From Schmidtea polychroa (taxonomy: Eukaryota): a stretch of DNA of 63,829 bases. The translations under genes were made by a program, and so were the position numbers. Where the stretch lies: positions 48,050,172-48,114,000 of the forward strand of contig CM097885.1 of NCBI GenBank assembly GCA_044892525.1, read 5' to 3'. The notes under the pieces are model-generated. The model saw nothing but the letters and a program-made list of their open reading frames with translations. It did no database searches and was not told the origin of the DNA. Below, one piece after another: positions 14,533-59,696 of the stretch. Within the stretch, counting starts at the first letter, position 1. Each line of letters opens with the position of its first letter.

Positions 14533-14539
14533 ATTAATC

Positions 14540-14990: not shown

Positions 14991-15138
14991 GAAACTTGTT
15001 CTTCATTGAAGAAAATGATAATCATTGAATGAAAATAATAATAATAATAAAAATGCAACTGATTGACTGAATTCAAGGTACCAGTACTTGTAAGATTCCA
15101 AATAACTAGGTAAAAATTGATGAAATTATTTTAAAAAT

Positions 15139-16859: not shown

Positions 16860-16884
16860 TTAAATGTTTTTAAATGTTTTACAT

Positions 16885-18353: not shown

Positions 18354-18388
<35 letters not shown>

Positions 18389-18450
18389 TTGATAATAATA
18401 ATAAAGTTTAATGGGTTGTATATGTGTGTAAAAAATATTTTAGCTTTTTC

Positions 18451-18486
<36 letters not shown>

Positions 18487-20780: not shown

Positions 20781-21756
20781 GATGGATAAGTTAAAAATTT
20801 ATTCGTTTGAATGTTTACCTCTGTTGAATCGGAAACTATTATGAAATAATGAATTTCCAATATGAAACATGGTTCAGACATACAATACCATACATTGACA
20901 TCAAATCATTTAAAATAATCTTCAATTAATATATATTACATACAAAATTTTATAGTGTTTGAAGATTTGAATTTTTTAAATCCCCTTGAAAAACATTTTT
21001 GCTATAAACAATTATATAAATTAAGATGTTGTTTTCGTTTTTTGATAATTATTTTCCGATGACTTCAAAATTTAATAATTTATATATAGACGAATTTTCT
21101 TGAGCTTCGTCTGCAGGTGAAATCTAACTCTTGGATCTGTCAAAAAATTACAGACTCTGTTCTCGTTAAATACCAAAACAAACTAAAAATAATTTCATTT
21201 TGATTTTGATTGGTTAAAAATAAAAAAAAAGTTTTCATTTTCACTGATTGTCTAATATTTACAATGCGTTACAAATGTAGTTTTTCTCTGTCTCATTTCT
21301 TTTCGTCGTTTCAGAACGAATAATTGTCATCGTAATTTGCTAAATACAATGCTTTCTACTGTCATTCTGTTACTATGACAACAAAAGTGCTTCAAAATCA
21401 ATATGTAGAATTTACTGAATTTTTTTATTGTTTCTTTATATTTCATATTATTGTTTTTTTCAATTTTCACCTCTGATTTCCTTTCAATTGACATTGTATT
21501 TATTAAAAAGCTTGGCTATGAATCAGTAGAAATATTTTTTTATATTCACGAATTTTCACCACAGTCTTTTTCAAGTGATTTTGATCATGATCTATTAATT
21601 TTGACAATATAGGGAAAAAATTAATATTTATGATTCATAATCAATTTTTTATTAAATACTATTTAATAATTATTAATAATTATTAATGATAATAAATATT
21701 GATCGCAAATTTTATTAATATTTTATTCTTGGTATTTTATTGCTAATTTTTATTCT

Positions 21757-22728: not shown

Positions 22729-22838
22729 TTTTAAGATTGACAAGGACTATCGTATAGTCGAAAATTCTTTCATTAAATACATTATTTGCAGCAAAAGGCT
22801 TAAATTATCATTTTATTGTTTTAAATAATAAATGCTGC
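22685..22838 (+). repeat. (TAA)n plus a single arm of family A
   Basis: Matches 66-172 and runs into an N-run at the same family position (after ...AAATGCTGC). Confidence 0.85.
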
Positions 22839-25817: not shown

Positions 25818-25945
25818 AAACTTTATGTAGCCCCAAATATTCTGCAGATTGCAGCACATGTCGATATGTTAACGGCGAAGAGCAAGGATGCTGTAGTGAT
25901 CAATGTGTTGGAGGTTGTATAGGTGGGGGATCATCTAAATGCACG
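25818..25945 (+). CDS. EGFR: EGFR-like exon, domain II
   Basis: ttcag|...|gtaaac. QTLCSPKYSADCSTCRYVNGEEQGCCSDQCVGGCIGGGSSKCT (CC..QC.GGC motif). Phase-compatible with both neighbours. Confidence 0.9.
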
Positions 25946-25993
25946 GTAAACAAATTGTCACGTTAAATTTCAGTTCAATATTTTCATTTCTAG

Positions 25994-27529: not shown

Positions 27530-28354
27530 TGGAGAAGATATGGACAAACCCGAAAGATCCATTAGGTTTTGGTGAAGTTGCAATGTTTAAGAAAATAGTA
27601 CCAAAGTCAAAAAATTAGATGCAAAAGTAGTTGTCGAGTCAATTGGCATACAGTTTAAAAAAACCAACATTGAAACGGTTTCGCACATTAGCATATAAAA
27701 CATATCAAAGATTTATGGCAAATAGATTTAATGGAAATCATTCGATTTTCTAAAATTTTCTATTTCGACATGTATTGATGTTTTAGTAGATTTGCTATAG
27801 CTATGCTCTTGAAAACCGAATCTGCTTGTGAAATGGTAGTTGCAATAAAAACAATCTTTAAAAATGGTAAACCAAATAATTTACAAACTGATTTGGGTAA
27901 AGAATTTTATAATAGTAAAGTTAAAGAAAATCTAAAGGGAATAAATAATTACTCTGCTTTTTCTCATTTCAAAGCTGCTTACGTGAAAAGGTTTAATAGA
28001 ACATTAAGATATCGTTTGAAAAAGAATTTTGTACATCAAGATATCAAAACTTGGATAAATGTTTTACCGAAAATAATTCATATGTACAATCATTCAGAAC
28101 ATAGAGATTTAAAGGGTATGAGCCCGATTGATGTAACATCTAAAAATACTATGAAAATATTATTATCACAACAAGATATAACAAAAACTACGAAACCTAA
28201 ATATGAAGTTAGTGATCATGTTGATATAAGTAAAATATCGGCTTCACCATTCATTAAATATTTTGACAACAACTGGAGGGATGTCTTTGAAATATTAAAG
28301 ATTAATACGAAACAGAGTCTTGTTATGTGTGTTATTAAAGATATTGACCTATAA
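27530..28354 (+). pseudogene. Maverick-type retroviral-like (rve) integrase, frameshifted
   Basis: WQIDL-like motif upstream, then KPNNLQTDLGKEFYN (second D) and KAAYVKRFNRTL (position of ERFNRTL). The N-terminal part is broken by stops and frameshifts. Confidence 0.85.
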
Positions 28355-28882: not shown

Positions 28883-31800
28883 TAGGGTGGGTCGAATGTT
28901 AATAAATTTTGAGTTCAAGAAAGGAAACATGGTTAAAAAGTTGTATTTTGGTATAGAAAAATCGAATCAAACCATTTTACTTAGATTTATGGACATTTAC
29001 TGCTCCCAACTTTTCTCCGAAAATGCAGTTCAACATAAGTGTGAAAACAATGTAATTTGGCCAGTGTCGGAATGTGTTTTGCGCCTTTGTCCATATTTAG
29101 ATGTAGCTTTCTTAAGAGCTTATAAGTATATTATTTACTCTCTTGGGCTGAGATAGTATATTCTGTGTCCTCATCCCGCATTGAAATATATCCTGACAAC
29201 GTCAGTGATTAGGAAGGGCCAAATTCGAATTATCCTTTTCAAAGACAAAAATCAACTTTCGAAATTATTTTTTATTAAAAACATCCAGCCAAAAGTTTAG
29301 AAATGTATTAGCGAGGGCATAAAAAGAAGTCACATGAAATCAGCTTTGCTTTGCACCTTGGGCAATTCCTTCCTTGATTTTTTACACAGTAGTACCATAC
29401 CATGTCTGGACTTGTGACCAAACACTTTGCAACTGGCAGAAGAAACATCTTTGATGGCTCTTTCAACGGCTTGAGAATGACAGGGAAATTGTTCTAATGT
29501 AATTTTCTTATTCATCTTCAATTCATGATCCAATATATGAGATAAAAAAGCGGGAGGCGTCAAATTACATTTTGTCCAGTCAATCATGTCAACATATGAT
29601 GTAGCAGACGACTGAAGAAAGACAGTATTCTTGTCCATAGTGCGAATCACTTCGGAAGGGAGAAAATTTTGTCTTGCAGTTATGATTTTTTCTGTTGAAA
29701 ACTTTCTGATTTCTTCATCATCATCACCAACAGCAGCTAGGAGTATATTTTCTGGATGTGAGAAGTAATTGTTGTTCTAAATGACAGGAAAGATGATTTC
29801 TTGGTCTGATGGATCCAAATCCTGCAGAAGTTGGAGCATATAAAAAATATTTCTTGCACCATCTTGGCATGACGAGTGAGTCTTTATATAAAACCATGAC
29901 GGTCCATAGAAATTGACAATAAATTTCACTATTCGCATGAGAGGTTCAGATGGAGCAGTTTCGGACATATATAGTCGCAGAATTCTATTAGCTTTCGTTA
30001 GCCAGCGACTGTGATTCAAATTTCCTGGTTGTGCCATTTGTAGAAAAGGGACATCCTTGTTGTTGTGGTACTCTTTCTGGACTGCCAAGCATACTCTGAG
30101 GAAATACAATTGATCAGTGTTCAATTCTTTCTTGACATTTTCACTAATATCTACGACCTTTCCAGGAAGGGACATAAAGGTTACTACGGGCTTGTCTTTT
30201 GGATCAAAATCAAGAACGCTTCCTATTTCACCACATGACGTTTTTGGACCTTTTGTTTCTCCACCATCGACGACTGAAAAATACTTCCTGAATGGCAATT
30301 CATTTGCATGCAACAAGCATATCAGCCATTGTAGAGGTCGCCCTAGGCTTTTTTCGAGTCTTCTGATTATTCCATTATTTTTTCCGGTGTTTGTATTGGT
30401 TCCATCGCACACAATTGCTTGAAGGGTCAGTGAGGACTGCGTGCTAACGATGATTGACATGATTTCTTTGCCAATATCCACAGCTTTACTACTTTGAGGT
30501 ACAACATGATCGATATATGTATCCCCTGGAAAGGCGACAATCACATAATGCTCCTCTTTTAGGATCCTTCTATGAAGTAAGGTGGAATCTTGTTTCCCGT
30601 CGAAACCGAGGCAAATCAAGTTTTTCGCTTCTGCTGAATGCTGTTCAATTTCTCTCTCCCTCCAGTACTTTCTCTGACGCCGTAATTTTGCGGGATCGAT
30701 GATTGTTTGAGAGGATAACAGTTCCATATCTTTCAGAAAAGCGTTTACTAGCAAACACGTGTCTCTGTTGCTCACACCACATCTATCAACAGCTTTACTT
30801 AATTCAGGATAATGTCTTCTATTTTGAAATTCATCACATTCTTCTACGCTTGACTCTGAGCTTTCTGTTGAATTGTCTAACTTATCTTTACTTTCATCAC
30901 TAGCGGCTTCACTCTCCGTGTCACTTCTTGAGGTCGGATGTAGATCGTTAACTTCAGTGTCCATTATTTCATTTTTCATTTGTTTTCCTTTTCCTGTAGG
31001 GCTGCTTTTCGTTTGTTTTCTCTTCAATTTTGAGGTTTCCTGTCTGTCCGCATTTCCGATTTTCATGTTTCTGGTAGTTTGTTGGTCAATCCAGAACTCC
31101 CACTCTAAGGTAGGAATTTTCAAGGCCAATCGGCATGTACACTGACTTCTTCCACGAGCACCATCATTAAAACATTTGCAGCAACATATGTCAAACAATT
31201 TGGAAAACGAGCTTAACTTATCTTGAAATTTGGCAGATGACCTCTTGCATTCTGGATACTTCTCTAATTCACGCACTTTTGATATTAGTCGCTTGACACG
31301 AACCACAATACTACTGAACTCAACAGTTGGGATACTTGCCTTCATATAAATTTCCTTCACCTTATTTGCGAGAAGAGTTGCTTGTTCGTTAAAGCCAGTA
31401 TGAAATTGCGTACATTTCTCATTGTAACAGTAATCACGAAACACATCTTCACAAGTAGGTAATTGGTTTCTGGGTAATTCACAAGTTTGACCAAACAGAC
31501 AATGACGTGATTTACTTCTTGTTTTGCGAAATTGCTTATTTCTCTGTCCCTTCATAACTGCTCTTCTGTACTCAGCTCTGGCAAAATAAAGGTGAATCAT
31601 CAAGTTAACTTTTTTAATTAGGTCCAGCAAACACTTGACATCCAATCGAAACAAATTAAATTATCTGAGTTTAGACTGACTAGTAGTATCCATGTGGATT
31701 ATGTGTTGACTGTAGTGTGTGTGTTAGTATTGTTCAGAAGAAATTGTCTTTGTGAGTGCTTGTGTGAAGGTGCTTCCGTGAATTAACCTCTCTATACATG

Positions 31801-35520: not shown

Positions 35521-35656
35521 CTTGTAACCTAATGAAAATAGCTGACCACACTGATGGGTCAAAGAATTTCTATTTGACGGCTAAAGATTTAGTTCAACTG
35601 AAAAATTGCAAAAAGATTGTGGGATATATAATTCTTACTATGGACTCATTTGTCAA
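35521..35656 (+). CDS. EGFR: EGFR-like exon, start of L-domain III
   Basis: tttag|...|gtaatt. PCNLMKIADHTDGSKNFYLTAKDLVQLKNCKKIVGYIILTMDSFVK corresponds to C......I.A.NI..F.NC..I.G.L.I. Confidence 0.88.
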
Positions 35657-36239
35657 GTAATTTTATTTCATTATTATCATGTTTATTTTAGCATTAGTTA
35701 GCCATACTACAGAAAAAAATTTACTCAATAGTTTTTTAAACTATTTTAAAAACTTTATTAAATACTGTATTTTCTTTATAAATTACTGTATCATTTATTT
35801 GAGTCAGTGTAACAAAGCTGAAATGTCAGTTTTTGACACGAATTTTTCATCATAGATAATAAAATTAAAAACAAGTTATTGTCGAATCCACATAGGTTTG
35901 TTTCCATCGATNNNNNNNNNNNNNNNNNNNNNNNNNNNNNNNNNNNNNNNNNNNNNNNNNNNNNNNNNNNNNNNNNNNNNNNNNNNNNNNNNNNNNNNNN
36001 NNNNNNNNNNNNNNNNNNNNNNNNNNNNNNNNNNNNNNNNNNNNNNNNNNNNNNNNNNNNNNNNNNNNNNNNNNNNNNNNNNNNCGCGGAAACTTTATAA
36101 AATTACTAATATTTGTTTTCTTTTTAATATACGTTAAATTCAACATTGCTGGTTCACAATTTTGACCATATTGTTCAAATCCAGACTCTTCTATATCTTA
36201 TAGCACTATAGATTGTATTTTTACATTCAGAGCCATTGA

Positions 36240-36530
36240 CCAGATTTAGTTGTCTACTGTGACACTTTAGAAACTGGATGTCTTCATGATTTAAGTGACA
36301 TCATCAACAAATTTCAGAGATACACAACAAAAACAATTAAACGTTTTCATAAAGTGCAATTAAAATGCGATCAATTTTTTCCTTAGTCAATCTTTCTACA
36401 AAAAAGATATTATGGGAGACATTGGTTATTAAATCACAATTAACATTCAATCAACAATGATTTCATTCGTTAAGCAAGTCTGTTCCAATATTTATTCTGT
36501 TTGAATGTTGATTCCTGAAACGCGTTGCAC
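36240..36530 (+). mobile_element. Penelope-like GIY-YIG remnant
   Basis: RFSC.. and KILWETLVIKSQ..NIQ are related to 24600-24950. They are followed by GAAACGCGTT, resembling the canonical PLE hammerhead stem III. Confidence 0.5.
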
Positions 36531-39500
36531 TACAATGAGATCTCGATCCGTAACTAATAATTCTGTCACTTCACAGATAAAGGCAACATAACTCAGATAA
36601 TCATTTAATTTTTTGAAAATCTCTTTTCGTCGTTATTAACATTATCTTTTAAAGCTATAGATTGAAATAATTTTACGGGTGATAAGTTATCTTCATGCAT
36701 AAATTCAGCCATTTTTGAATCATGTTCATCTTCTATGTACAAAAGATTAACTGTTTGTAAAATAGCTAGGTTCATTTGGCAAAGATCAACTATTTCTTTT
36801 AATAATTCTATTTGTTCTTTATCGAATAATAATAAAACTTTAATATCACGGAGATGTATATATATGATATATATTATATATAATATATTCCAACAATTAA
36901 ACTAGAATTTAAACACCAAAAAACTTCTTCTAAAATTAAAATACACTTTTGAAATACAAAATATGCAATTGATTTTTATCTCAATTCCGGCCAACACTGC
37001 CAGACAACTTGCACACCAAAATTGCAGCATTAAAAAATTCACACACATGCNNNNNNNNNNNNNNNNNNNNNNNNNNNNNNNNNNNNNNNNNNNNNNNNNN
37101 NNNNNNNNNNNNNNNNNNNNNNNNNNNNNNNNNNNNNNNNNNNNNNNNNNNNNNNNNNNNNNNNNNNNNNNNNNNNNNNNNNNNNNNNNNNNNNNNNNNN
37201 NNNNNNNNNNNNNNNNNNNNNNNNNNNNNNNNNNNNNNNNNNNNNNNNNNNNNNNNNNNNNNNNNNNNNNNNNNNNNNNNNNNNNNNNNNNNNNNNNNNN
37301 NNNNNNNNNNNNNNNNNNNNNNNNNATAATAAAAACTATAATAATAATAATTAAATAATTCTTCTTATTTGTTAATTTGTGAAACGTTTTGATTTCTTTT
37401 CATTTTATTGTATGGCTTTCTGAATATCTGTCGTTCAATCAAAGGCGTAACCATAGGTTAGTGAACGACTACCTGGACTCCCAGACATTAGGGGCCCCAG
37501 AGGCGTTTGGTTGCAGAATCCCATACTTTTTGTAAATTAATATGAATAGAATGAATATTAAAAATTTAAGTTAAAAGTCTTCATTCTAAACTGAACTAAA
37601 ATATAAATTTTTTATAGTAATTAAATTTTATAAAAATGTAACATTTTGTAGTTTTTAATGCAATATTTATGCAATATTTATGGTAAAATAATAATTGTGA
37701 AATTGGTTTTATGAGTAAATTGAATTTTATGAGTTATATTGTACAATAATTATAATATGCATTGATATATGATTTTTGTATTTACTTCTCTATTAGCTGC
37801 TGCCATTCATAGTTTTTGTTTCTGTGTTAGTTTGATCACTCTTTATGTATGTTTATATGATGATGTAAATTTTTAATATTTTAACGCGTCAGTTTATTTA
37901 GTAAAATCATTTTAATGAAAACTACACATAATTGTTCATCAATGTTTTGTAGAAACTAAAATTATTATTTTATTTCTCAATATGGAAAAACTAAATTATG
38001 ACGTCAAAGCTCAAAAGAGGCAAGTGCAGAAAAATGAATGTATGCAAAATTACCTAAATAGATGCATGTTTAGCAACGACCAATACATAAATGAAAGGAT
38101 ATGTTGAAAAAAAATGTCATTAATAATTAATCAAAACAAAATTTCTATTTAGGAAATTAAATGAAAACAGTAATTTTTACTGATAATATGAAAAGTTAAG
38201 TAATTTCTCTAAATGACTCGTTTAATAAACCACCGGTTCCGTATTCAAAGGATATTTCACAAGAGAATAGAAGTTAAAGCTGAAAATATTTACAACTTTG
38301 ACTACATAGGGACTAGCACCTTGGACTTAGGTATGGTATTCAAGAATGTTTGATAAAGATTATTCCAAAAATTTTCGGTTATTTTTCACAAATATCAGTC
38401 AATGAAGATTCTGATTTCGTGATTGAAAAAAAAACAAAAATATAAATTTTTAAAATATAATTAATTAATATTAAAAAGCTTGAAGACTATGAATCAGTAA
38501 AGACTATGAACCGGTAAAATATATCGATGTTTTTTAATATATTTACTGATTCATAGTTTTCAAGCTTTTTAATAATAAATACAATGGAACAGAAATCAGT
38601 GATGAAATTTGAGAAAAAAAGTTCTTATAATAATTAATTAAAAAAATACAAATGCAAATCAATTAGAAATACGAAAATAAAATATCAAAAATTAAGTGCA
38701 AAGATTAATTAAAAGAATTTGAAAAATTTGAATATTAATATTTTTTCAAAGGAAAAAAATATGAGACGGGTAGCGAATAGAATAATTATAAATCGGTCGC
38801 GGATCCCTAAATTAATTAATTAATTTAAAATTTGCTGACATTATAAATAATTCCTCTAGAAAAACAAAAATGACCGTATTTGGCAGGTGCAATGGTGGCC
38901 TGTCAGATTAGGGCTTAGTGGCGGTAATTAATTATTATTTTTTTTATCATTTATATATACTGAACTGGGAAATGATAAATGTTGCCAGTTAGTATAAAAA
39001 GAAAACGAGCAAATTATGAAACGAAAATCAGAGAATGGCACATTATATTACGACAATAAATTGCAATTGTTAGTTTGCCAGATAAACAAAATTTCTTGTT
39101 TGAAATTTAAAAAGAAGAAATATTTTTTTTTGCTTTATCCAAAGCATTAGCTGTTAAGGAGTAAAACTTTCGAAAAGTTGACCACCGGTAAACTTATTCA
39201 AATTTTAAGTTTTTGATGATGGTATGTTGAAATTTTTTAAAATTAAATAAAGTCATTTATATTTTGGGTTGTGTTTTGATCGAAGGAACATGAGGAAACA
39301 GAATAAAATTTAGTCATACCAATATTATTTTTACAACAAACAATATTCACAAGCAAAAAATTATACAAAAAAATCTGAAGAAAGATATATGAAAAAGAAA
39401 GTACTAAAGTATACTTGCAAAAAATGAGTGATTTTTTAAAAATATTTTTGTATTTTTATATTGTACGTAATATATTATTAGTAATATATTATTGTTATCA

Positions 39501-42088
39501 TATATAAAAATCCTCTAGAAACGTTTTGGGGTCTGGGCTTTTAAATTCCATTTACTCTGTTGTATATAATCATTTATATTATTTGAATAAACTTATTATC
39601 ATATTGATTTTAAACTATTAATTCATTTTTAATAATTCTATAACTTTTGGGGAAAATAATTCTGTCATGTTTCAATTAGGAAAAGAAACATTGTTACATT
39701 AGTGAGGATTGTTTTTCTATTTTTAAAATGGAAAATATTAAATTTTTAAAAATCATTTGAAAAGTTTTGGATGTATTTTATCACAGCTTGATTATATTAG
39801 CACAAAGTTATTTTATTAATTATTATATTACATTAAAGAATATATTATCGAGATTATTTTCCTCTGGGGAACAGTACATTATTTAATATTAACAGCACAT
39901 ATATTTAAAATTTTTTATTATCGTCAATTTTAAAATTTTAAATTATTTACTAAAACCATTATAACTTAAATTTTGTAATTTTTCATATTTTATTGACTCT
40001 AAAACGTATCATTATAATATATCGCCTAAATTACTTTTTTAAACTTGAACACTTTTGCGCCTTTATTTTAAACTGATAACTAAAATTAAAAATAAAATTA
40101 TTTATTCATTATTAATAATATCAAATATTTTTAATATTACAAGAACTTTTTTTCAATTATTACCACTGATTTCTTTTCAATTGACATTGTATTTATTAAA
40201 ATGCTTGACTATGAATCAATAAATATATCAAAAAAATACATCGATATCTCTCTTTTCTGATTCATGGTCAAGCTTCTTAATAAATAATATATTTTTAAAT
40301 TTAATAACTATAATAACCTTTTTTTAAAAGAAATTTGATATTATAATTTGAAATTTAAATAATTTCTTTTAATAATAAATAATGTAACTTTTAATCCATA
40401 AAATTACGCAGAGAAATTTATTATATCATAATCTATTTTAATTATATTTGTTTTAATGATCTACTGATTTTTTTATTTATTTAAATATAATATATACATG
40501 AAATGTATACATATAACATAAATCGATTAATAAAATCAATAAAATGTTCATTACTTAATATAATCATAATAAATTTTGAAATATTATTTTCGAAATGTTA
40601 CGATCATTTACACAAATTAACAAAATTATATGGTTAAAGTAAACTGTTAACTAAATGGATTGGAATTGACCTCAAAAAGTAATTATCAAATATAAATATT
40701 TTCTTCAGCGATAGATATTAATAAAGTGATATCTATCCATAATCCAACAAGCATAAAATATAAATATATAGTTTTAATATTAGAATAAATTTACACTTTT
40801 TTTCTTTATCCGAAATTAAAAACATACTATTCCTATAAAAGTTTTCAATACTAAATTTTTAAAATTTTTTTCTGGAAGTTGTGCCAAAATTTTGTGTTGA
40901 AAAACTAACAATATTGATCTGCAATGAAAATAAACTTTGAAAATAAATGAAGATAAAAACAACTGAAAAAATTATTAATATTTTCGAAAAAATGTTTTTT
41001 TTAAATTTAATCGGTTTAATAAAATTAAGGATTATGAAAAACCTGAAATAAAGTATTAAAATAACCTAAGTGTTCCCAGAATTATTGAATTGCTAACAAT
41101 ATCAAAAATAAAAAATTAATAAAGTTGAAAGTATTTTTGAAAGATTTGGTATAGTTGTCAAAATAAGTCAACAGTCAAGACTAGATAAACAACGGCCTAA
41201 TCACAACAAACTGAATTTTAACTATGAAATTCAATTTTAAAATATTAAAAATAAATTGAAATAAGTTATCTTTTAATAGTCGCTTATCAGATTATTAATT
41301 AATTTAGTTTTAATTACTATAAGACATTTATTTTTGTTCGAATTTTATCCTATTAAAAAATATTCTATTGTAATCGCTATTCATATTTTTTAATTTTATT
41401 TTAATTTATCATAAAAAAAATTTGATGAAAATTCTTTTCCCTAATTTTAATTGATTTATATTTTCTACAGTAATTTCACAAAATAGATTATAGATTTCTA
41501 TATAAATAAATTTTATAAATTTAATAAAAATCAAAACATTGAAAAATTAAACCAAAATTTCCAAAAAAAGTATATAAATAATAAGATTTAAAAATCATCT
41601 GAAACAAAAATCCCGCCGCGTNNNNNNNNNNNNNNNNNNNNNNNNNNNNNNNNNNNNNNNNNNNNNNNNNNNNNNNNNNNNNNNNNNNNNNNNNNNNNNN
41701 NNNNNNNNNNNNNNNNNNNNNNNNNNNNNNNNNNNNNNNNNNNNNNNNNNNNNNNNNNNNNNNNNNNNNNNTATTAATATTCGTATCATCGTATAAATTA
41801 TTATTAAAATTGTTATTATATGAAATAAAAACTAATTTTTTTTAATTTATCTCAGAGAAAAATATGGAATTTAGAGTTGAGTACAAAAAATTCAAAACAA
41901 TTTTTCAAATTACTCTGACTGCGATCAAATGGGGACCCAAATAGATAAATGCCGCCAGCATATTAAAATATTTGCTCAGTCTTAATTTAAAATATCATCT
42001 CTTAATTTTTGGTATTGAATAAAAATCTTTGAATATATTGGAAAATATGATGTATTCCGACAGAAATTTACAAATTTACAAATGTTTT

Positions 42089-42136
<48 letters not shown>

Positions 42137-42479
42137 TTTAAAAAGGTAGTGGTAAAATTTCGTGAATATCAAAAAACATCGACATCTTTACTGATTCATA
42201 GTCAAGCTTTCTAATAAATACAATGTCATTTGAAAAGAAATCAGTGGTGAAAATTGAAAAAAGCTCTTATAATATGTAATTCATTAAATCTGTGTTTCTT
42301 TGTGTGTGGGGAAATATTTTTCGTTTCATCTATTTAGAAGTTTATTTACGTTGTGTCTTCAAAAGGTTTCCGGATTAGGAGCTAAAGGAAGTCAACAGGA
42401 GTGATATGTTTTAACATAAGAACAACAAAAGTATGCAGGCTTTATTTTTCAATATAAAACCCATCGTGGTTGGCACACT

Positions 42480-43130
42480 TTTTCCAGTGTACGTGAGTTC
42501 CAAAATGATAGTTTTGAAGAAAATAGGGTGATCTAAGAGAACAAATCCACTTTTCTTCATCATTGCCATTATTTCCGCTTTTTGGTGAATTGGGTTGTTG
42601 TTTTTGAGAAACCGTAGATGGAGACTGCATAGCTTCCGACGATTACGTCTGCATGTGTCCATGAGGTTGTTGTAGTATGTGGTATTAATTCGTTGACCTA
42701 TCTCAGTGAAATCCGTACAGATTATGCCACTGATTTCAAAGAATTGTCAACCTCAATGATTTCTGATGACATGTTTCAGATATCATTTTTCTGGAACTCG
42801 GTTTTCCAATGAATTTACATTCGCTGTACTCACAATAATGATATAGTAATCATAGTAATGATATTTCTAAGGAATTGGTCACCGTCAAAATGAGAAGTCT
42901 TACCTGACTGCATTCTCTCTGGTTTTCGCACTTTTCAAAAGAAATAAAAAGTGGACCAATTTGGATGCAAATTTCCTTACGCACCTTCTGTACTCACATT
43001 CAACCACCATGAAATATCCAAAATAGTGATTTGGCGTTCTTGCTTCACAATTTGAAAACATTCCTCTATTTTTTAATCAGAAATTTCACAAGGACGATCA
43101 ACATTCTCATCATCAAACACTAACTGTTAA
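42480..43130 (-). mobile_element. Mariner transposase remnant
   Basis: The minus strand reads FDDENVDRP...QERQITI (D..RSGRP / DRRIT) and NNNPIHQK...GFVLLDHP (HDNAPAH...LL.HP). Confidence 0.7.
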
Positions 43131-43829
43131 CCATGTTTGAACTGGCTAATCCAATCGTATATTGTGGTTCTAGAAAGATATATATTGTTATAAATTGTCT
43201 GCAACTGAATCCATATATTTACTTACTGTTATCACTACGCAAAACAAAGAATTTAATCATTTTCGATACTTGACAGGATGTTGCATGATTTTGCATATAA
43301 ATTGACAATGTTGTCTCCCACACTGCTATGCAGGTAAGTATTGAAATAAACTATATTTTTGTTCTCATAAATAATATATTATGATTTCACCAGAATATTG
43401 TTAAAGTACTTTTATTTTGGAATGGGGAAATGTGCAGAAAGAGTAGAAAGATTGAGAGTGTATCAAATGAATAATTTACATTACAAATACACATCAAAAT
43501 AACTAAATTAAGATCAATTAAAACAACATTGTAATAAATGTTCTAAATAGCGGCCATAAAATGAATAGTACAAATGGCTGTAGTAGAAATAATGAAAATT
43601 GGAATTCCGCATGTTGATATTTTAAACAACTATCTGCCTATGCATTCGATGGACGAAAATCTGTAAATAAACTGATCATAATTTCACAGAAGTCATCAAT
43701 GAACCAGATCAACAAATATAAGTTCTTGGCAATCTTTATTAGACATAAATTTAACAAATTCGAGCTAATCAACTGTTGAAAATTGGCTTGTTATTTATCA
43801 TTTATTTTAAATTTTCATATATAAATATC

Positions 43830-44194
43830 TAGTGGCGGAACTTCAAAATTTGGGCCCCCGCGCAATGTAAAATAATTCCACAGTAATTTGTTTTTAACAA
43901 AAACAAGTTAGATATTTATTTCATATATCATAAAAATAATACAAAAATGAAAGTAAAACTTAATGGACCTTAAAAATTAAAATCTTTCCTCCTTGCCTTC
44001 ATATTGGCAAAAAAATTTTCGGTTAAAGGTTAATACATAGTTATTCACAGCAGCCGCTATTCAATGATAGTTTTATGTTTGTAGGCAAATATAACTGCGG
44101 AAAAAAAGTTTCAGAAAATGATTGTAAATATTTTTTTAGTAATAATTTTGGGCCCCCGCAACGCAGGGTCCTGCGTCCACTAGTTACGCCACTG
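43830..44194. mobile_element. hAT MITE
   Basis: TIR TAGTGGCGGAACT / AGTTACGCCACTG, subterminal TTTGGGCCCCCGC twice, degenerate 8-bp TSD TAAATATC / TACCTATC. Confidence 0.7.
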
Positions 44195-44484
44195 TACCTA
44201 TCCCTCTAAATTATTTTACACTGTAACAATTAAATAATAAAAATTATTATTCCTATTAAATTCAATTTTTTGCTTATTTAAAAAATATTCAAGTAAATAC
44301 TTCAATAAATATATCAATAAAAAAATTGGAATTAGTTGGACAATGAAGAAAGAAGACATATGAAATCATATAATTGTTTAATAAATTAGTGTTATCCTAT
44401 GTCAGTGTCAAACGTTTGGATGAAATCGGAAATATATGGACCATGCATAAGAAAATCATACTCCGAAAGAATTACATATATAAA

Positions 44485-44517
44485 TCACTTGAAAAAGGCT
44501 GTGCCGAAAATTCGTGA
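44485..44517 (+). ncRNA. Candidate minimal type I hammerhead ribozyme, U3-A8 variant (family B, best-preserved copy)
   Basis: ucac-UUGAAAA-A-[GGC ugu GCC]-GAA-AAUU-C^-guga, with a 4-bp Watson-Crick stem I. Confidence 0.55.
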
Positions 44518-45983
44518 ATATCAAAAATACATTGATATATTTACTGATTATTAGTCAAGCTTTTTAATAAATACAATGTCAATTGAAAAGAAATCAGTGG
44601 TGAAAATTAAAAAAGTTGTATTTATTAAAAATTTGACTAAAAATTTGACTATGAATAAGTAAAGATATAGATCAAAGAAGAAAAAACCATCGATATATTT
44701 ATTGATTTATAGTCAATTTTTTTCATAAATATAATGCCATTTGAAAAGAAATCAGAGATGNNNNNNNNNNNNNNNNNNNNNNNNNNNNNNNNNNNNNNNN
44801 NNNNNNNNNNNNNNNNNNNNNNNNNNNNNNNNNNNNNNNNNNNNNNNNNNNNNNNNNNNNNNNNNNNNNNNNNNNNNNNNNNNNNNNNNNNNNNNNNNNN
44901 NNNNNNNNNNNNNNNNNNNNNNNNNNNNNGTATCTAGAAGAAACTTTAATATCGAGGTGTTTCGTTTTTTCAAGAGACTCTTAAATTCTAGTGAATAACG
45001 TTTTATTGGGGTTTTAAAATAAATAATTCTATTATAGGCTACAAGACCTTTAATAGATCAAAGAAGAAGTATTAAAATTATCGGACCACTAGAAAAGAAA
45101 AGTTTGGGAAACACTGTTCAAGAGGATTGCATCTCATATATATAAAAAGGTTTATTTCCATTATTGCCAACGAAAAATTAGTTCAATTTCATTGTAACCA
45201 CTCTTTTATGAATTGAAGGTGCATTTATAATGAGAATATTTACAGTCCATCTCGTTAATTATGAAAATGTTATATGGACATAAAAAATATATATCACGTC
45301 AGAGATTTACACTGACAAATACTAATACATCGTATCTTTTGGATGGTGATTCTTAAAAAAACCTTAAGAGACAAGTTCCATATGTTTACAATGAATACAG
45401 TTTAATACAATTACATTTAACATAAATTTTATATCTGTTAAAAGTTCTAACCAATTTTAATGTTTTTCTTGTAGAGAAATTGGAATTGAATTTTTCTGAC
45501 TGAAATTGTCTTTTTATCAATGTGTTTGGTGGTAAGCGTTTGGATATACTTATACAGTGTAAACCGCTTATTGTGATGAGTATTGGAGAAAGTCTACTTT
45601 TCATCACACCAAACAAGAATTTTCTTTAATTTTTGGCATTCTAAAACAAGCGAAATAATAAGGATCATTATTTTATAAATTATATTATTATATTATTATA
45701 TTATTATATTATTATGAAAATAAAATGCAGTTCATTTGGATTGATCTTAATATTATTTAGTTATTTTTATTTACATCACTTACTAATTTAGTTTCTATAA
45801 TTGTTCCAAAATCAAATAAGGAAATTTATAGAATTTATATTTACTTTCCTCTAATTACTCTGTCAACAAATTACAATAATGTTAGTTTGTAAACAAAACA
45901 TTTTCTGATTTTTTGAATGATATTTTCAAAGAAAAATTTATATATTATTTGAAATGTTTTTTGATGTTTTTAAATATATTTAG

Positions 45984-46120
45984 GTATAATATAACAGTTC
46001 AAATGCTTTATGAAAATTTTAACAAACTTCAAGAACTCGAAGGTGGATTCAGTTACTTCAAAGATAATCATCTGACGAATCTTACTTTCTTTCACAATCT
46101 TGTTAGATTTAGGGCAGCAA
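45984..46120 (+). CDS. EGFR: EGFR-like exon, L-domain III
   Basis: tttag|...|gtaagt. YNITVQMLYENFNKLQELEGGFSYFKDNHLTNLTFFHNLVRFRAA (L..F.NL..IRG pattern). Confidence 0.9.
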
Positions 46121-46408
46121 GTAAGTTTAAATTAAAATTTTATAAGGTGATTATGTTTATTAATCAACGTTTAATATTAAAATATTCAATATAAACATTT
46201 TTTTAGTTACCATAAATAGCATATATATGAAATAGAAAGTAAATGCAAATAATTATTTACAATATCAGCAAACATTACTATAACATCTGTGACAACGTTT
46301 TACATACTCTTATTGGAAAAATGATTTACTAATCCAAAATTAGATCAGTGTAATAGATGGTCAGAATATTGAAAATAAACAACTCACAAAACTTATTAGA
46401 CCCGTCAC

Positions 46409-47532: not shown

Positions 47533-47735
47533 CTTGGTAGCAGCATTAATTAAATTTTAAACAGTTAAATGAAAATTTAAACCTTTTGCTTTTAAATATA
47601 TTATATTATATTATTTTATTATATTATTTTATATTATATTATATTATTTTATTATATTATTTTATATTATTTTAAATATATTATTTGTATTAAATATATT
47701 ATTCGCTGCAAAAGGCTTAAATTACCATATAATTG
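47533..47735. repeat. Diverged family A foldback with an (ATATT)n centre
   Basis: TTGGTAGCAGCATT...CCTTTTGC on the left and GCTGCAAAAGGCTTAAATT on the right. Confidence 0.65.
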
Positions 47736-47992
47736 TTTACGTCGTTATTACTTTGTTCAATTTTCTTCTATTTTTTGATAAAGCTGACAATATTTCTTCA
47801 GCTTAAGCCTCTCAAATTGTTTACTTTAACACTCATTTACAATTCTTCAAATAATCTAAATTTTTTACATTTCTAAATTTCATTTTATTTACATTTTAAT
47901 AATTTTCAAGTTTCTCTCTTTGAGTATGAATTTGATAAACCATAATACTACATAAAACAGCCAAATTCCTTTTATTCTTTATTTTTATTCAG

Positions 47993-48202
47993 ACTTACAT
48001 TCGGCAATGCTTGATTTACCCAATTATAACAAGTTTGCTATAAGCAGCACGGAACTTGAATTTTTGGGTTTGAAATCACTTAAGGAAATTAATGGACGAT
48101 TTCAATTCCACAACAATCCTAAACTTTGTTACATGAATTTTCCAAAAAATGAATTATTTAAAGATATAAAGAATTTTGGGTATAAACCATCAAATTGTAC
48201 AG
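47993..48202 (+). CDS. EGFR: EGFR-like exon, end of L-domain III
   Basis: ttcag|...|gtatga. ...LEFLGLKSLKEINGRFQFHNNPKLCY... matches the EGFR pattern LGLRSLKEI.G...N..LCY. Confidence 0.93.
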
Positions 48203-48253
48203 GTATGAAAAAATTTAATTTCTTCAGATTTATTTGAATATTCTTCGCATTAG

Positions 48254-48504
48254 ATAAAGTATGTCATAAAGAATGTTCTGAAAAGGGATGTTGGGGACCT
48301 GGAAATAAACTTTGTTATAACTGTAGGAATTATGAAGCAGCTGACTCATGTGTGTCGGATTGTCGTCAAAAGAAAGGATTTTATTTCCCCAAAAACTCGA
48401 CAATTTTAAGCAATCAGACATGCCTCAGATGTCATCCTGAATGTTTGAACACGTGCTTAGGTCCTAATCCAAATCAGTGCATTAAAGGGTGTAAAAATAA
48501 AAGA
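48254..48504 (+). CDS. EGFR: EGFR-like exon, domain IV
   Basis: attag|...|gtaatt. DKVCHKECSEKGCWGPGNKLCYNCRNY...CLRCHPECLNTCLGPNPNQC. Confidence 0.93.
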
Positions 48505-48586
48505 GTAATTGATTTTACTTTTGTTAAATTTTTAAAATTGTTTTTCAATTTAATTAAAATTATATTTATTTATTTATATATATCAG

Positions 48587-48761
48587 GAAAATGGAACCTG
48601 TGTTGCATCATGTTCCAAGAATTTTTATAATCCATTAAATAATACTAAGGCTTGTTTAGCCTGTCATCCAAATTGTACAGAATATAATTCCACTGTTTGT
48701 ACTGGTCCATCGTCGGTACCGGGCTTCGGTGGCTGTAACAAATGCGAAAGGATTTTATTAA
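48587..48761 (+). CDS. EGFR: EGFR-like exon, extended Cys-rich region
   Basis: atcag|...|gtaaat. ENGTCVASCSKNFY...CLACHPNC...CTGPSSVPGFGGCNKCERILL. Confidence 0.92.
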
Positions 48762-55900: not shown

Positions 55901-57253
55901 AATCACTTGAAAAATACTGCCGAAAATTCGTGAATATCAAAAAACATCGATATATTTACTGATTCATAGTCAAGCTTTTTAATAAATACAATTATATTTA
56001 AATCAATAATATTAAATTATTTATAATTTAAAAATATATCATTGTTTGAATATACTAAGAATCAGCAAAAAAACTTGAAATTTAGGAGCTGGACTTCAAA
56101 TCCATGTTGGTATAATTCATCGTAAATTACTAAAATATAATTTCATGGAAAAATTGAAATTGGAGCACATGTGATGTATGACTACTGTTATAACTGCTGA
56201 AGTTCTAGAATTACCCCATTCTGGGAAATTTTCAATTAGCCATTCATAACTACTAAGTAATGAATGAATTGTTTATACTGCTCTTCATTACTCAACTTTT
56301 TAAAGGATAATACAAACATACGTAGAATATATAATGTTTATGTGTGACGAAGCTTAGGCTGAAAAAGTAGATGTGAAAGAGATAAGTCCAACGTTATGTC
56401 TAATGAATTTCGTGGTGATAATTACACTTTGTTACAATCTACAAAACTGTTAGTTTAAAATAATGCTGATGATTTATTTAATGTCTTTTAACGAAAGACA
56501 AAATTTAATAGGAATGTATTAATTACTCTATAATTTAAAACATGATTTGTAAGCATATGACCATCTGAGCATTTGATACCAGGATTGGTAGTAGGTATTA
56601 ATTATTTATTGAAAACATGGATTCATATGGTTTTGGTCCAATGAACTAAATGTTTTTGTTGTTTTTATTTATTTAACTTTTTGATAAAGAAATTTTTTTT
56701 AAATTGTTTTTTGGTATGTAATTTATTTTAGTTTCTTACATTTTGACATTGGTTTTACAATTCTTTTTGACTCTTTTTAGAAATAACTTCTAATTTCCCT
56801 ACTGGTCATTACTGGACTCGATTTATTAGTCGCAAATTAAATCTTTATTATCATTTTATGACGATTTATATTGCAGATTGGGCTACCGATAATAAATTTG
56901 AAATTCGTTGATAATATTGCCTGAGGTTAAATTTTAAATGACAGGAAATATTTTTTATCAAATTTCCTAAAAGTGTTTTGAATATAAAATCTAATTTTGA
57001 GAAATTTGAACTCACGAAAGAGGTCCTACAACGGAATTATCGCCACTGTTTGAGCGTCTCAAAATTTGGTTAAAGATATTGAAATTAAATTACAAAAAAT
57101 TTCTTATTTAAATTATTTAATTTTAATACTGTAAATTTAACGTTAAAATTAATAATGCATAAAATAAAATAATATTATTAAAATTATTAATATCAAATAG
57201 AAAATTTTATTGAGTTCGAAAAATTAGATAGTTAATTTAGCTATTGTTTAAAG

Positions 57254-59696
57254 CAGGGCTTCTTAAACTTTTTTCATTTACGACCCCATTTATGATTGCG
57301 AGTTTCCTAGCGACCCCATATAAATATAACAGAAAGATAAATAAGTATTTTTTGATGGTTTATTTATTATGTAACAATACACATGAAAAAATATAGTTTT
57401 AGAATTCGTTTGGAAACATACAAAAATTTAAAATTAAATTTAATGAGATGGATGTGCCTGTTTTTTATTGCATAACAAATTAAATCTTGGTGGAATGTTT
57501 GACACTGCTGGACGTAAGACCTCTACAACATTTTTTAGCGATGAATGATATTGGGATTTAATATGTGTTAAAGCTGAGAAAGTAACTTCACATAAATATG
57601 TGGTGTTGAATGGCAGAAGCACATTTAACGCCATATCAGCGATTGTGGGAAATTCAGTTCTAGTTCCGATCCAGAATTTAGTCAAGGGCTTTTTTGGAAA
57701 ATGTAGTTTTAGGTTTGAGTCACTCGAAAGCTCAGCAAATTCCTCTTGTGCTTTAAGTGGCAGGTGATCAATCTCACTCAAGTCAGTCCAAAACGGTTTT
57801 TGAATCCAAGCTACCTTTTTGAAATCAATATTTAATATAAAATATGTGCGGAACTGTGTTTCTAGCGTTTTTAAGTGATCTACAATAATTATTGCGATAA
57901 TAGTTTTACAATGATTTTTCTCGATTATAAAATTGTCGAGACTGGAAAACATTTCGAACGAATTCTTTTCTACTCTACTTTTCCAAATGTTGATCTTTTT
58001 AATAAAACTTTCAATTTTATCATTAGAAGTAAATATATCGCAATTTTTTCCTTGAAGAGACAAGTTGAGATCGTTTAATTTCTCAAAGATATCTGACAAA
58101 TAACACAGCTTAGATAGCCATAAGTCATTTTGAAAAAAAGCAGCAAGTTCACATTTTCGTTCGGTTAAAAATATTTCGATTTCATCCTTTAATAACAATA
58201 ATCTTCTTAAACTTTTACCTCTTGACAGCCATCTTACTTCTGCATGTAATAATAAAGTTGTGTAGTTGGAATCCGTATCCTTGCAGAGATTTGAAAATAA
58301 GCGACTGTTAAGGGCATGGCTCTTAATAAAATTTATAATCTTTACAGCATTCTGAAGCACATCGTTCAATTCTGGTGCTAATTTTTTTGATGCAAGGGCC
58401 TCTCTGTGAATAAGACAGTGAGTAAAAGTTATATGATCATAAGGAGCAGCTTGAAAAAATGATTTAAAACCAATATTTTTGCCCGTCATCGCTCTTGCAC
58501 CATCTGTGCATATTCCACAGCAATTTTTCCATTCTAAACCTTCAGTTTTTAAAAATTCGTCAACTTTACAATATATGTCTTTCCCTGTAGTATGGTCTTT
58601 CATAGGACGAGAAAATAACAATTCTTCCTCCACGTTTTCTTTATAAACGTACCTGACATATACTAACAACTGAGCCAATTTATTAATATCCGTTGTTTCG
58701 TCCAACTGAATTGAAAATTTTGGGCTTTCTTTAATTCTTGCAATAAGTTGCACTAATTGGTCCTTGTTAATATCAGAAATTCTATTCGCGACAGTATCGT
58801 TCGACAAAGGAATTTTTCGAATATCATCGCCATATTTACTTCCATGTAGTATTTCTACCATTTTAATAGCAGCAGGTAATATAAGATCTTCTCCAATGGT
58901 GAACGGCTTTTTCTTTTTAGCAATACAGTATGAAACTTCATATGACGCTAATAAATATTTTTCATTAACGGTCATAAATTTTTGAAAGGATTTTTTTTCT
59001 TTATTTAAAGATTTATACAATCTTTCAAAATATTCTTTTGGTTTATTGACATACGAAACATGCTTTGATTCAAGATGTCTTTTTAATTTTGATGGTTTCA
59101 TACTCTCCGCAGCCAATAATTCATTGCAGATCAAACAAAGAGGTTGTTCATTACCATTACAAATTTGAAATGTAAAGCCAAATTGAAGAAAAGACTCATC
59201 ATATTTTCTTTTTCGCACATTAAATGGCTGTTTTTCAATACTTTGTCCTGCCTGAGGAGAGTTTGTAGCATTATCATCTGCGTCATTATCATTCTTATTT
59301 AAGTTCAGCCATTTATCCATGGCCAATAAATATATAAAAATAACATATTGCATATAATAATTGTCATTAAAAAATGTCATTAAATTTAATAACACATAAA
59401 AATTTCACAAATATTACTTTAAAATGAAGTTCAATAAAATTAATATTATTTTAATAAATAAACAAAAGTAGTACATTAATTTATACTATAAATTTTATAC
59501 TATTCTGATATATTATAAATTAATCGAAAAGTAATTTTCGAAAACAAAATATTTTTAGAGTTAAAAAACATTAAATAGTCATTAATTTAAAAAAAAATCG
59601 TGTATTTAAATATTTGGCATTAAAAATCTCTCGCGACCCCAGAATTATGCTAAGCGACCCCATTTGGGGTCGCGACCCATAGTTTAAGAAGGCCTG
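57254..59696 (-). mobile_element. Full-length Buster/Charlie-type hAT transposon (2443 bp)
   Basis: TIR CAGGGCTTCTTAAACT / AGTTTAAGAAGGCCTG, GCGACCCC subterminal repeats and 8-bp TSD GTTTAAAG / GTTTAAAT (central TA). Confidence 0.92.
57440..59320 (-). CDS. Uninterrupted Buster-type hAT transposase (~626 aa from MDKWL; ZBED5/SCAND3/FAM200-like)
   Basis: BED finger CLIC...HLESKH, then LDETTD, CTDGA, CLIHRE, EVRWLSRG and YLCEVTFS. No stops or frameshifts. Confidence 0.92.
   Translation of the reverse strand: MDKWLNLNKNDNDADDNATNSPQAGQSIEKQPFNVRKRKYDESFLQFGFTFQICNGNEQPLCLICNELLAAESMKPSKLKRHLESKHVSYVNKPKEYFERLYKSLNKEKKSFQKFMTVNEKYLLASYEVSYCIAKKKKPFTIGEDLILPAAIKMVEILHGSKYGDDIRKIPLSNDTVANRISDINKDQLVQLIARIKESPKFSIQLDETTDINKLAQLLVYVRYVYKENVEEELLFSRPMKDHTTGKDIYCKVDEFLKTEGLEWKNCCGICTDGARAMTGKNIGFKSFFQAAPYDHITFTHCLIHREALASKKLAPELNDVLQNAVKIINFIKSHALNSRLFSNLCKDTDSNYTTLLLHAEVRWLSRGKSLRRLLLLKDEIEIFLTERKCELAAFFQNDLWLSKLCYLSDIFEKLNDLNLSLQGKNCDIFTSNDKIESFIKKINIWKSRVEKNSFEMFSSLDNFIIEKNHCKTIIAIIIVDHLKTLETQFRTYFILNIDFKKVAWIQKPFWTDLSEIDHLPLKAQEEFAELSSDSNLKLHFPKKPLTKFWIGTRTEFPTIADMALNVLLPFNTTYLCEVTFSALTHIKSQYHSSLKNVVEVLRPAVSNIPPRFNLLCNKKQAHPSH

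What the first reader, a model, noticed from the sequence alone, without database searches (positions are those of the whole stretch)
44485..44517. A second, unrelated family has the same variant hammerhead architecture, on the sense strand of an EGFR intron
ucac-UUGAAAA-A-GGC(ugu)GCC-GAA-AAUU-C-guga shares with family A only the predicted catalytic positions (UUGANAA, extra base, GAA-AAUU-C). Stems I and II differ completely yet still pair. This cross-family covariation is the strongest sequence evidence for a real U3-A8/AAUU hammerhead subclass. The other copies (1070-1110, 21545-21580, 42133-42167, 55903-55933) have broken stem II or core, as expected for decaying insertions. This copy lies in intron 35657-45983 in the sense orientation, so cleavage could affect the pre-mRNA.
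Basis: partly seen in the sequence, partly recalled or inferred. Interest (0 to 1): 0.8.

Follow-up and report, generated by a model that had tools for sequence, protein, structure and literature searches.

The report
Known Penelope-type minimal hammerhead, intronic copy
The 33-base motif is real and fits a hammerhead ribozyme variant already published in 2014 for Penelope-like retrotransposons; this copy is one intact relic of a very abundant short repeat inside an EGFR-type gene intron and most likely does nothing to the gene.

Summary
The sequence at 44485-44517 (+) reads exactly as described. RNA contigs confirm the intron as 35657-45983 on the + strand.

A literature-based descriptor finds two families with no detectable similarity outside the motif: A (8714, 8453 rc, 68, 22734) and B (44485). 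Simulations expect 0.02 hits per window, and none under the strict form.

It is not a new subclass. Cervera & de la Peña 2014 (PMC4209133) described these features in minimal hammerheads of Penelope-like elements:
- no helix III
- a palindromic 15.2-16.2
- an extra base between positions 9 and 10.1
- G10.1-C11.1
- a 4-5 bp helix I
- the U3-A8 core swap, about 1,300 hits in Schistosoma mansoni
- dual motifs on opposite strands
- little activity, and only as dimers

First readers of this scan (unchecked) noted U3-A8 motifs elsewhere in this genome. Two follow-up agents judged Penelope-type motifs ordinary.

Family B is a roughly 150-nt repeat present in thousands of copies. The motif decays at the same rate as the rest of the repeat. 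No Penelope coding sequence lies in the window. Folding predicts that the hammerhead shape hardly forms in context, and the mRNA splices normally. A true oddity remains: the motif is an optional ~43-nt end module whose edge is not the predicted cut site.

The parts
44485..44517 (+). Intact minimal hammerhead motif of family B. Helix I 44485-44488 pairs with 44514-44517. Core U3-A9 is 44489-44495 and the extra A is 44496. Helix II is 44497-44499 with 44503-44505, and its loop is 44500-44502. G12-A14 is 44506-44508, AAUU (15.1-16.1) is 44509-44512 and C17 is 44513. The predicted cut lies between 44513 and 44514.
44485..44527 (+). About 43-nt hammerhead end module, an optional terminal extension that resembles the Penelope 'tail'. 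Both of its edges are discrete boundaries of the repeat across the genome.
   Evidence: (18 DNA contigs diverge before 44483; 9 diverge after 44527)
44528..44613 (+). Body of this family B unit.
44616..44672 (-). Inverted, headless fragment of the family B body.
   Evidence: and reading
44676..44760 (+). Second, headless direct copy of the family B body. It runs into the N stretch at 44761.
   Evidence: (D7)
42133..42275 (+). Family B copy in the same intron, inserted in a (TA)n run. Its hammerhead core is broken (G5>T, damaged helix II).
55903..55992 (+). Family B copy with a 2-nt deletion in helix II and a truncated body.
961..1102 (-). Family B copy with G12>C and a helix II change.
21456..21578 (-). 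Family B copy with a mismatched helix II.
40127..40286 (.). Headless head-to-head palindrome of family B bodies, centred near 40228.
38500..38623 (.). Headless family B copy preceded by a short inverted fragment.
   Evidence: (D7)
8714..8752 (+). Family A minimal hammerhead motif: GAGA/UUUC helix I, U3-A8 core, extra G, 6-bp helix II, AAUU, C17.
8453..8491 (-). Family A motif on the other arm of the perfect palindrome 8401-8804. The two motifs point outward.
   Evidence: (I4)
68..104 (+). Family A motif with a 3-bp helix I, preceded by an inverted partial copy at 1-60.
22734..22770 (+). Family A motif with a 3-bp helix I, directly after an (AAT)n run.
47535..47740 (.). Headless family A palindrome. 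Its arms start just after the motif position, and the centre is filled with AT-rich repeats.
35657..45983 (+). Intron of the EGFR-type receptor gene that holds the motif in sense orientation.

Best explanation
The motif is a minimal type I hammerhead of the kind found in Penelope-like retroelements, in its published U3-A8 core variant. It sits at the edge of a short (about 150 nt), gene-less, very high-copy repeat (family B). This repeat is laid out like Penelope end repeats: an optional terminal module of about 43 nt, head-to-head inverted copies, and insertion into AT or (TA)n sequence.

What is shown: the sequence fits every constrained position; a second family, unrelated outside the motif, fits too; the copies decay neutrally.

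What is inferred:
- In the family's active source transcripts, two such motifs would pair through their AAUU tracts to form a double hammerhead that cuts after C17, or the fold would serve the retroelement machinery in some other way.
- This particular copy is a solo relic in an intron. It has no intact partner, so it is catalytically silent and irrelevant to the EGFR-type gene.
For: - Exact sequence.
- Descriptor hits against simulations: 4 versus 0.023, and strict form 3 versus 0 in 300.
- A and B share all 16 constrained core positions plus G10.1-C11.1. They differ at N7, the extra base and both helices. Their bodies are unrelated.
- Published description of the same architecture, including U3-A8, the extra base, the palindromic 15.2-16.2, the 4-5 bp helix I, dual motifs on opposite strands and mostly solo motifs (PMC4209133).
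- Penelope layout of inverted 5'-adjacent copies, an optional 30-40 bp tail and a (TA)n bias (PMC8557442), matched here.
- Family B depth of about 117,000 against about 17 for unique DNA in run X5.
- Neutral decay: 9.7% in the motif against 9.3% in the body.
- Normal splicing across the intron.
Against: - No reverse transcriptase or GIY-YIG coding sequence was found among the 103 open frames of 62 aa or more in the window. The link to Penelope-like elements therefore rests on architecture, layout, literature and unchecked earlier notes.
- Helix II of family B has only 3 bp, against 6-8 bp typical of published families.
- Rfam hammerhead models do not score it.
- The repeat's sharp edge is the start of helix I, not the predicted cut site. 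The fixed and variable ends could mean that the transposed RNA is antisense to the motif.
- No cleavage evidence: only contigs were available, not reads.
Confidence: 0.8

Rival explanations
1. The conserved module is kept as a recognition or initiation signal of the retroelement machinery, not for RNA self-cleavage. It would act like the Penelope 'tail', which lies between two reverse-transcription start sites and is needed for endonuclease recognition. The hammerhead fit would then be a relic or a passenger.
For: - The motif is an optional terminal module of about 43 nt with two discrete edges, at 44485 and about 44527. Family A behaves the same way.
- The repeat edge does not coincide with the cut site.
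- Frangieh et al. 2024 found that hammerhead mutants do not affect insertion in vitro, and found no reads ending at the cut site (PMC11167929).
- Craig et al. 2021 note that hammerheads may simply parasitise Penelope-like elements (PMC8557442).
- The folded hammerhead has a probability below 0.5% in context.
Against: Two unrelated families keep exactly the hammerhead-constrained bases while both helices change and still pair. A protein-binding site would not obviously require that. In the anole element the tail and the hammerhead are separate, about 90 nt apart.
Confidence: 0.2
2. This intronic copy is an active ribozyme that cuts the EGFR-type pre-mRNA after 44513 and so modulates the gene.
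For: The copy is intact at every constrained position and lies on the sense strand of intron 35657-45983.
Against: - Minimal hammerheads are inactive as monomers.
- The only other B copy in the intron, at 42133, has a broken core.
- The intermolecular AAUU helix is predicted unfavourable, at +4.2 kcal/mol, and a competing hairpin at 44492-44565 dominates.
- Spliced mRNA contigs cross the junction at depths of 131.6 and 14.5.
- The copies of this family in the window show neutral decay.
Confidence: 0.04
3. The match is a chance resemblance in AT-rich DNA, or the end of an unrelated mobile element such as a Helitron 5' end (TC after A), a MITE or a SINE.
For: - All five headed copies start with TC after an A.
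- The isolated 33-mer folds no better than shuffles, z = -0.97.
- An AT-only descriptor hit at 62249-62282 shows that chance matches do occur.
Against: - The strict descriptor gave 0 hits in 300 simulations, yet two unrelated families match.
- The two ends of the B unit are not inverted copies of each other on inspection, and the window holds no tRNA-like sequence.
- The far ends are variable and show no Helitron-type 3' hairpin.
- The fit covers features that were not selected for: the extra base, G10.1-C11.1 and the palindromic 15.2-16.2.
Confidence: 0.03

Closest known systems
Minimal hammerhead (min-HHR) of Penelope-like elements, U3-A8 variant of the Cercyon family in Schistosoma mansoni (Cervera & de la Peña 2014, PMC4209133)
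   Same: - Type I layout with no helix III, and A15.1/U16.1 around a palindromic 15.2-16.2
- Unpaired base between positions 9 and 10.1
- G10.1-C11.1
- 4-bp helix I
- U3-A8 in place of C3-G8
- Many sequence families per genome, mostly solo copies
- Pairs on opposite strands a few hundred bases apart
   Different: Helix II of family B has only 3 bp, against 7-8 bp in the published S. mansoni families; family A has 6 bp. No Penelope coding sequence is nearby. The host is another AT-rich animal genome, not identified here. In this genome the motif coincides with the optional terminal module of the repeat.
Dimer-dependent small hammerhead variants of Penelope-like retrotransposons (Lünse, Weinberg & Breaker, RNA Biol 2017; cited as ref. 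134 in PMC6765202; paper not held)
   Same: A very short palindromic stem III, which implies cleavage only as dimers.
   Different: I could not read the paper, so I could not check whether it covers U3-A8 cores.
Non-LTR retrozymes of animals (Cervera & de la Peña 2020, PMC7229834; Li et al. 2026 preprint 10.64898/2026.07.22.740005)
   Same: Short, gene-less, AT-rich repeats that carry a type I hammerhead. They are proposed to be non-autonomous derivatives of Penelope end repeats.
   Different: Retrozymes are head-to-tail tandem arrays of 170-400 bp with canonical hammerheads, which have a helix III and loop-loop contacts, and they give abundant circular RNAs. Here the copies are dispersed or head-to-head, the motif is minimal, and two of the three RNA-labelled runs laid (X2, X3) show no family B contigs; X1 does, no more than its apparent DNA background would give.
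Penelope 'tail', an optional 30-40 bp terminal extension (Craig et al. 2021, PMC8557442; Frangieh et al. 2024, PMC11167929)
   Same: An optional end module of about 43 nt, present on some copies and absent on others, next to inverted copies.
   Different: In the anole element the tail lies about 90 nt downstream of the hammerhead. Here the module is the hammerhead itself.

Membership tests
Penelope-type minimal hammerhead (min-HHR) | Core boxes: C/U3-U4-G5-A6-N7-G/A8-A9, G12-A13-A14 and H17, with positions 3 and 8 able to pair | tested here: met
   The core is U3 U4 G5 A6 A7 A8 A9, then GAA, then C17, at 44489-44513. The U3-A8 pairing is a published variant.
Penelope-type minimal hammerhead (min-HHR) | No helix III or loop 3: A15.1 and U16.1 flank a palindromic 15.2-16.2 | tested here: met
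   AAUU lies at 44509-44512, and family A has the same. The feature is listed in PMC4209133.
Penelope-type minimal hammerhead (min-HHR) | [quoted passage not shown] | tested here: met
   It is A at 44496 in family B and G in family A.
Penelope-type minimal hammerhead (min-HHR) | G10.1-C11.1 closing pair of helix II | tested here: met
   G 44497 pairs with C 44505, and family A has the same pair.
Penelope-type minimal hammerhead (min-HHR) | Short open helix I of 4-5 bp (type I) | tested here: met
   Family B has UCAC/GUGA, 4 bp. Family A has GAGA/UUUC, 4 bp including one G-U.
Penelope-type minimal hammerhead (min-HHR) | Long helix II of 6-8 bp, which is typical rather than defining | tested here: inconclusive
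   Family B has 3 bp with a 3-nt loop, and family A has 6 bp. The published search used relaxed helix sizes.
Penelope-type minimal hammerhead (min-HHR) | Several consensus families per genome, with helices that change but still pair | tested here: met
   Two families have unrelated bodies and entirely different helices I and II. Within family B there are no clean compensatory changes, only decay.
Penelope-type minimal hammerhead (min-HHR) | Location in the end repeat of an element that encodes a reverse transcriptase and a GIY-YIG endonuclease | tested here: inconclusive
   None of the 103 open frames of 62 aa or more matches an RT or GIY-YIG family. Published motifs are mostly solo as well. 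The layout is Penelope-like. Earlier notes that claim a link elsewhere in this genome were not checked.
Penelope-type minimal hammerhead (min-HHR) | Mg-dependent self-cleavage after position 17, as a dimer | not testable with these tools
   Only assembled contigs were available, so no molecule ends could be seen. The thermodynamic model does not favour the dimer helix.
Canonical type I hammerhead (Rfam hammerhead models; retrozyme type) | Helix III with a loop, C3-G8 core and loop 1-loop 2 contacts; scores with the Rfam hammerhead models | tested here: not met
   No hammerhead match appeared at the gathering threshold or at E up to 10 around either family.
Animal non-LTR retrozyme | Head-to-tail tandem arrays of 170-400 bp units, each with a hammerhead | tested here: not met
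   The copies are dispersed or head-to-head. The second direct unit at 44676 lacks the motif.

The most novel reading that the evidence does not exclude
In this genome the minimal hammerhead may itself be the optional terminal 'tail' of Penelope-type non-autonomous elements: a discrete module of about 43 nt that is swapped between different bodies. The repeat's sharp edge falls at the start of helix I, not at the cut site. This would mean the fold is used for reverse-transcription initiation or termination, or for endonuclease recognition, rather than (or as well as) for self-cleavage. That would give a concrete handle on the unresolved role of hammerheads in Penelope-like elements.
Probability: 0.15. 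Interest if true: 0.55.

Novelty: new member of a known kind. Interest (0 to 1): 0.25.

Why it matters
As an annotation it is useful. It identifies two abundant short repeat families of this genome as carriers of the U3-A8 minimal hammerhead. In the held literature that variant is reported only once, in Schistosoma mansoni, and I found no test of its activity there. It does not reveal a new ribozyme class or a regulatory mechanism for the EGFR-type gene. The modest open point is what these motifs do for Penelope-type elements. The module boundaries seen here, and the mismatch between the repeat edge and the cut site, bear on that question and could be tested genome-wide.

Tried and rejected
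- **Rfam.** The gathering-threshold scan of the whole window found nothing. E-value scans around both families gave no hammerhead match. The only matches were long-hairpin microRNA look-alikes on the 8401-8804 palindrome, which reflect the perfect hairpin and not a gene.
- **Helitron 5' end.** The copies start with TC after an A, but there is no conserved 3' end or hairpin and the far ends vary. Rejected.
- **MITE or terminal inverted repeats.** On inspection the two ends of the B unit are not inverted copies of each other. The inverted copies found are whole-body head-to-head copies. Rejected.
- **tRNA-derived SINE.** No tRNA-like sequence was found in the window.
- **Target-site duplications.** None was convincing in the AT-rich flanks.
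- **Penelope coding remnants.** A Pfam scan of all 103 open frames of 62 aa or more found none.
- **RNA ends at the cut site.** The runs are kept only as contigs, so no ends table was produced.
- **Earlier findings by sequence.** The lookup came back blank.
- **Lünse et al. 2017.** The paper is not held. The supplements of the 2014 paper are not held either.
- **Organism.** I did not identify the organism. The protein-atlas lookup of the hAT transposase gave no help on taxon.

Full report
**1. The observation**

In hammerhead numbering the parts are:
- helix I: 44485-44488 paired with 44514-44517
- U3-A9: 44489-44495
- an extra A: 44496
- helix II: 44497-44499 paired with 44503-44505, closed by G10.1-C11.1
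- G12-A14: 44506-44508
- A15.1-A15.2-U16.2-U16.1: 44509-44512
- C17: 44513

The isolated 33-mer folds into helices I and II at -5.5 kcal/mol. That is no better than shuffles (z = -0.97), as expected for so small a motif.

The pattern TTGANAA-N4-30-GAAAATTC occurs 7 times against 0.25 expected. These are copies of only two families:
- Family A is at 71, 8718 and 22737 (+) and 8457 (-).
- Family B is at 44489, 55907 (+) and 21550 (-). Near-copies lie at 1070-1102 (-) and 42133 (+).

**2. Is it more than chance?**

I wrote a descriptor from the published features, not from this window. It requires:
- helix I of at least 4 bp
- a C3-G8 or U3-A8 core
- 0 or 1 extra base
- helix II of at least 3 bp
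- GAA
- a palindromic A...U tract of 2, 4 or 6 nt
- a non-G base at position 17

It finds the two arms of family A at 8714-8752 (+) and 8453-8491 (-), family B at 44485-44517, and one AT-only hit at 62249-62282 that looks like chance. In 300 first-order Markov simulations of the window the mean is 0.023 loci. When the extra base and G10.1-C11.1 are required, the count is 0 in 300. A relaxed form adds the other two A copies and no further family, against 0.09 expected.

The bodies of A and B score at or below the shuffled mean in local alignment. Between the two families every constrained core position is identical. N7 (C versus A), the extra base (G versus A) and both helices differ, and the helices still pair.

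**3. What the repeat is**

Family B is a unit of about 150 nt whose shared sequence begins at the first base of helix I in all five headed copies. Each is preceded by A-rich or (TA)n DNA.

Headless copies exist as head-to-head palindromes whose arms start about 43 nt in. They lie at 38500-38623, 40127-40286 and 44616-44760. The far ends vary, at about +95, +128 and +150.

Family A behaves alike. Headed copies start at 8714, 22734 and 68. The stretch 8401-8804 is a perfect palindrome with two outward-pointing motifs (I4). The stretch 47535-47740 is a headless palindrome.

In the DNA-like run X5, family B reaches a word depth of about 117,000 against about 17 for unique sequence, which means thousands of copies. 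Eighteen contigs diverge just before 44483, and nine carry 44485-44527 joined to a different body.

Only the 44485 copy is intact. Divergence from the family consensus is 9.7% in the motif and 9.3% in the body, which is neutral decay.

No reverse transcriptase or GIY-YIG frame is found among the window's 103 open frames of 62 aa or more.

**4. Comparison with what is known**

Cervera & de la Peña 2014 (PMC4209133) defined the minimal hammerhead of Penelope-like elements with these traits:
- no helix III
- palindromic positions 15.2-16.2
- an unpaired base between 9 and 10.1
- a conserved G10.1-C11.1
- a helix I of 4-5 bp
- many variable families per genome, mostly solo copies
- pairs on opposite strands 100-700 bp apart

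They explicitly report a U3-A8 covariation in the Cercyon element of Schistosoma mansoni, with about 1,300 hits. They found no activity for a single motif and weak activity for dimers or trimers.

Craig et al. 2021 (PMC8557442) describe inverted 5'-adjacent copies, an optional 30-40 bp tail and a (TA)n insertion bias. Frangieh et al. 2024 (PMC11167929) place the tail between two reverse-transcription start sites. They also found that hammerhead cleavage is not needed for insertion in vitro, and saw no reads ending at the cut site.

The motif here meets every sequence feature of that class. Two typical features are not met: a long helix II, and a Penelope coding sequence nearby. Rfam's hammerhead models do not score it, as expected for this minimal form. 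U3-A8 appears in only one paper of the held library.

Earlier first-reader notes of this scan, which I did not check, report U3-A8/AAUU Penelope hammerheads elsewhere in the same genome. Two follow-up agents judged Penelope-type minimal hammerhead motifs there ordinary.

**5. Gene context and the proposed effect**

RNA contigs of runs X1 and X2 cover 45984-46120 only. Their overhangs match 35627-35656 upstream and 47993-48022 downstream. The intron is therefore exactly 35657-45983 on the + strand.

The exons carry these domains, in EGFR order:

| Domain | Coordinates |
|---|---|
| Furin-like | 25808-25963 |
| Receptor-L | 45886-46191 |
| GF_recep_IV | 48238-48627, E = 6e-17 |

No kinase exon was seen in the window.

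Several points argue against cleavage of the pre-mRNA:
- This is a solo minimal motif.
- The only other B copy in the intron has a broken core.
- The nearest-neighbour model gives helices I and II a probability below 0.5% in a ±60-nt context, because a hairpin at 44492-44565 competes.
- The same model makes the intermolecular AAUU helix cost +4.2 kcal/mol.
- Spliced contigs cross the junction at good depth.

RNA-labelled runs X2 and X3 have no family B contigs. X1 has them, but no more than its apparent DNA background would give. Words of family B also occur in RNA-labelled runs of a second organism.

**6. What remains odd**

The repeat's sharp edge is the start of helix I, 29 nt upstream of the predicted cut. 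The motif plus about 10 nt behaves as an optional, exchangeable end module.

If the fixed end marks the start of reverse transcription, the transposed RNA would be antisense to the motif. If the RNA is sense, something other than cleavage sets the 5' end. One window cannot settle this, and I have recorded it in the notebook.

**7. Verdict**

This is a new member of a known kind, and its interest is low to modest.

Noticed in passing
window 57440-59395 (-): An uninterrupted 651-aa frame of a hAT-type transposase (ZBED5/FAM200-like; weak matches to the Spin-doc zinc finger and the hAT dimerisation domain). It may be a recent or domesticated copy, and it lies downstream of the last receptor exons seen.
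   Followed up: partly
window 29777-31654 (-): A 625-aa open frame in the only GC-richer island of the window (39.5% GC). It has no Pfam family at E 0.01 and sits between Furin-like exons of the receptor gene.
   Followed up: no
window 8401-8804: A perfect palindrome with 202-nt arms, no spacer and 100% match. It carries a family A hammerhead on each arm and is flanked by (ATT)n runs. It could be a real foldback or an assembly artefact. It draws spurious plant microRNA matches in Rfam.
   Followed up: partly
window 173-389, 22839-23010, 44761-44929: N stretches begin at the same point of the family A unit in two copies (just after ...AAATGCTGC), and another begins inside a family B copy. The masked or gap stretches therefore adjoin these repeats systematically.
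   Followed up: no
window 43826-44195: Another high-copy repeat with GC-rich inverted ends (TAGTGGCG.../...CGCCACTG), MITE-like, inside the same intron. RNA contigs of runs X2 and X3 cover it with an internal 130-nt skip (43881 to 44012). It has no Rfam match.
   Followed up: partly
window 10631-20276: A large inverted-arm structure with arms of about 1.5 kb at 99-100% (10942-12475 with 18451-19984; 12556-14079 with 16877-18400).
   Followed up: no
window 44483-44613: Exact 31-mers of family B occur in RNA-labelled runs of a second coded organism, from many independent studies. The repeat family is therefore shared by at least two species.
   Followed up: no
window 27779-28351 (+): A 191-aa frame with a weak integrase-core (rve) match, probably a retroelement or Maverick remnant.
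   Followed up: no
window 62249-62282 (+): An all-A/T sequence satisfies the loose hammerhead descriptor. It is a useful example of what a chance match looks like in this DNA.
   Followed up: yes
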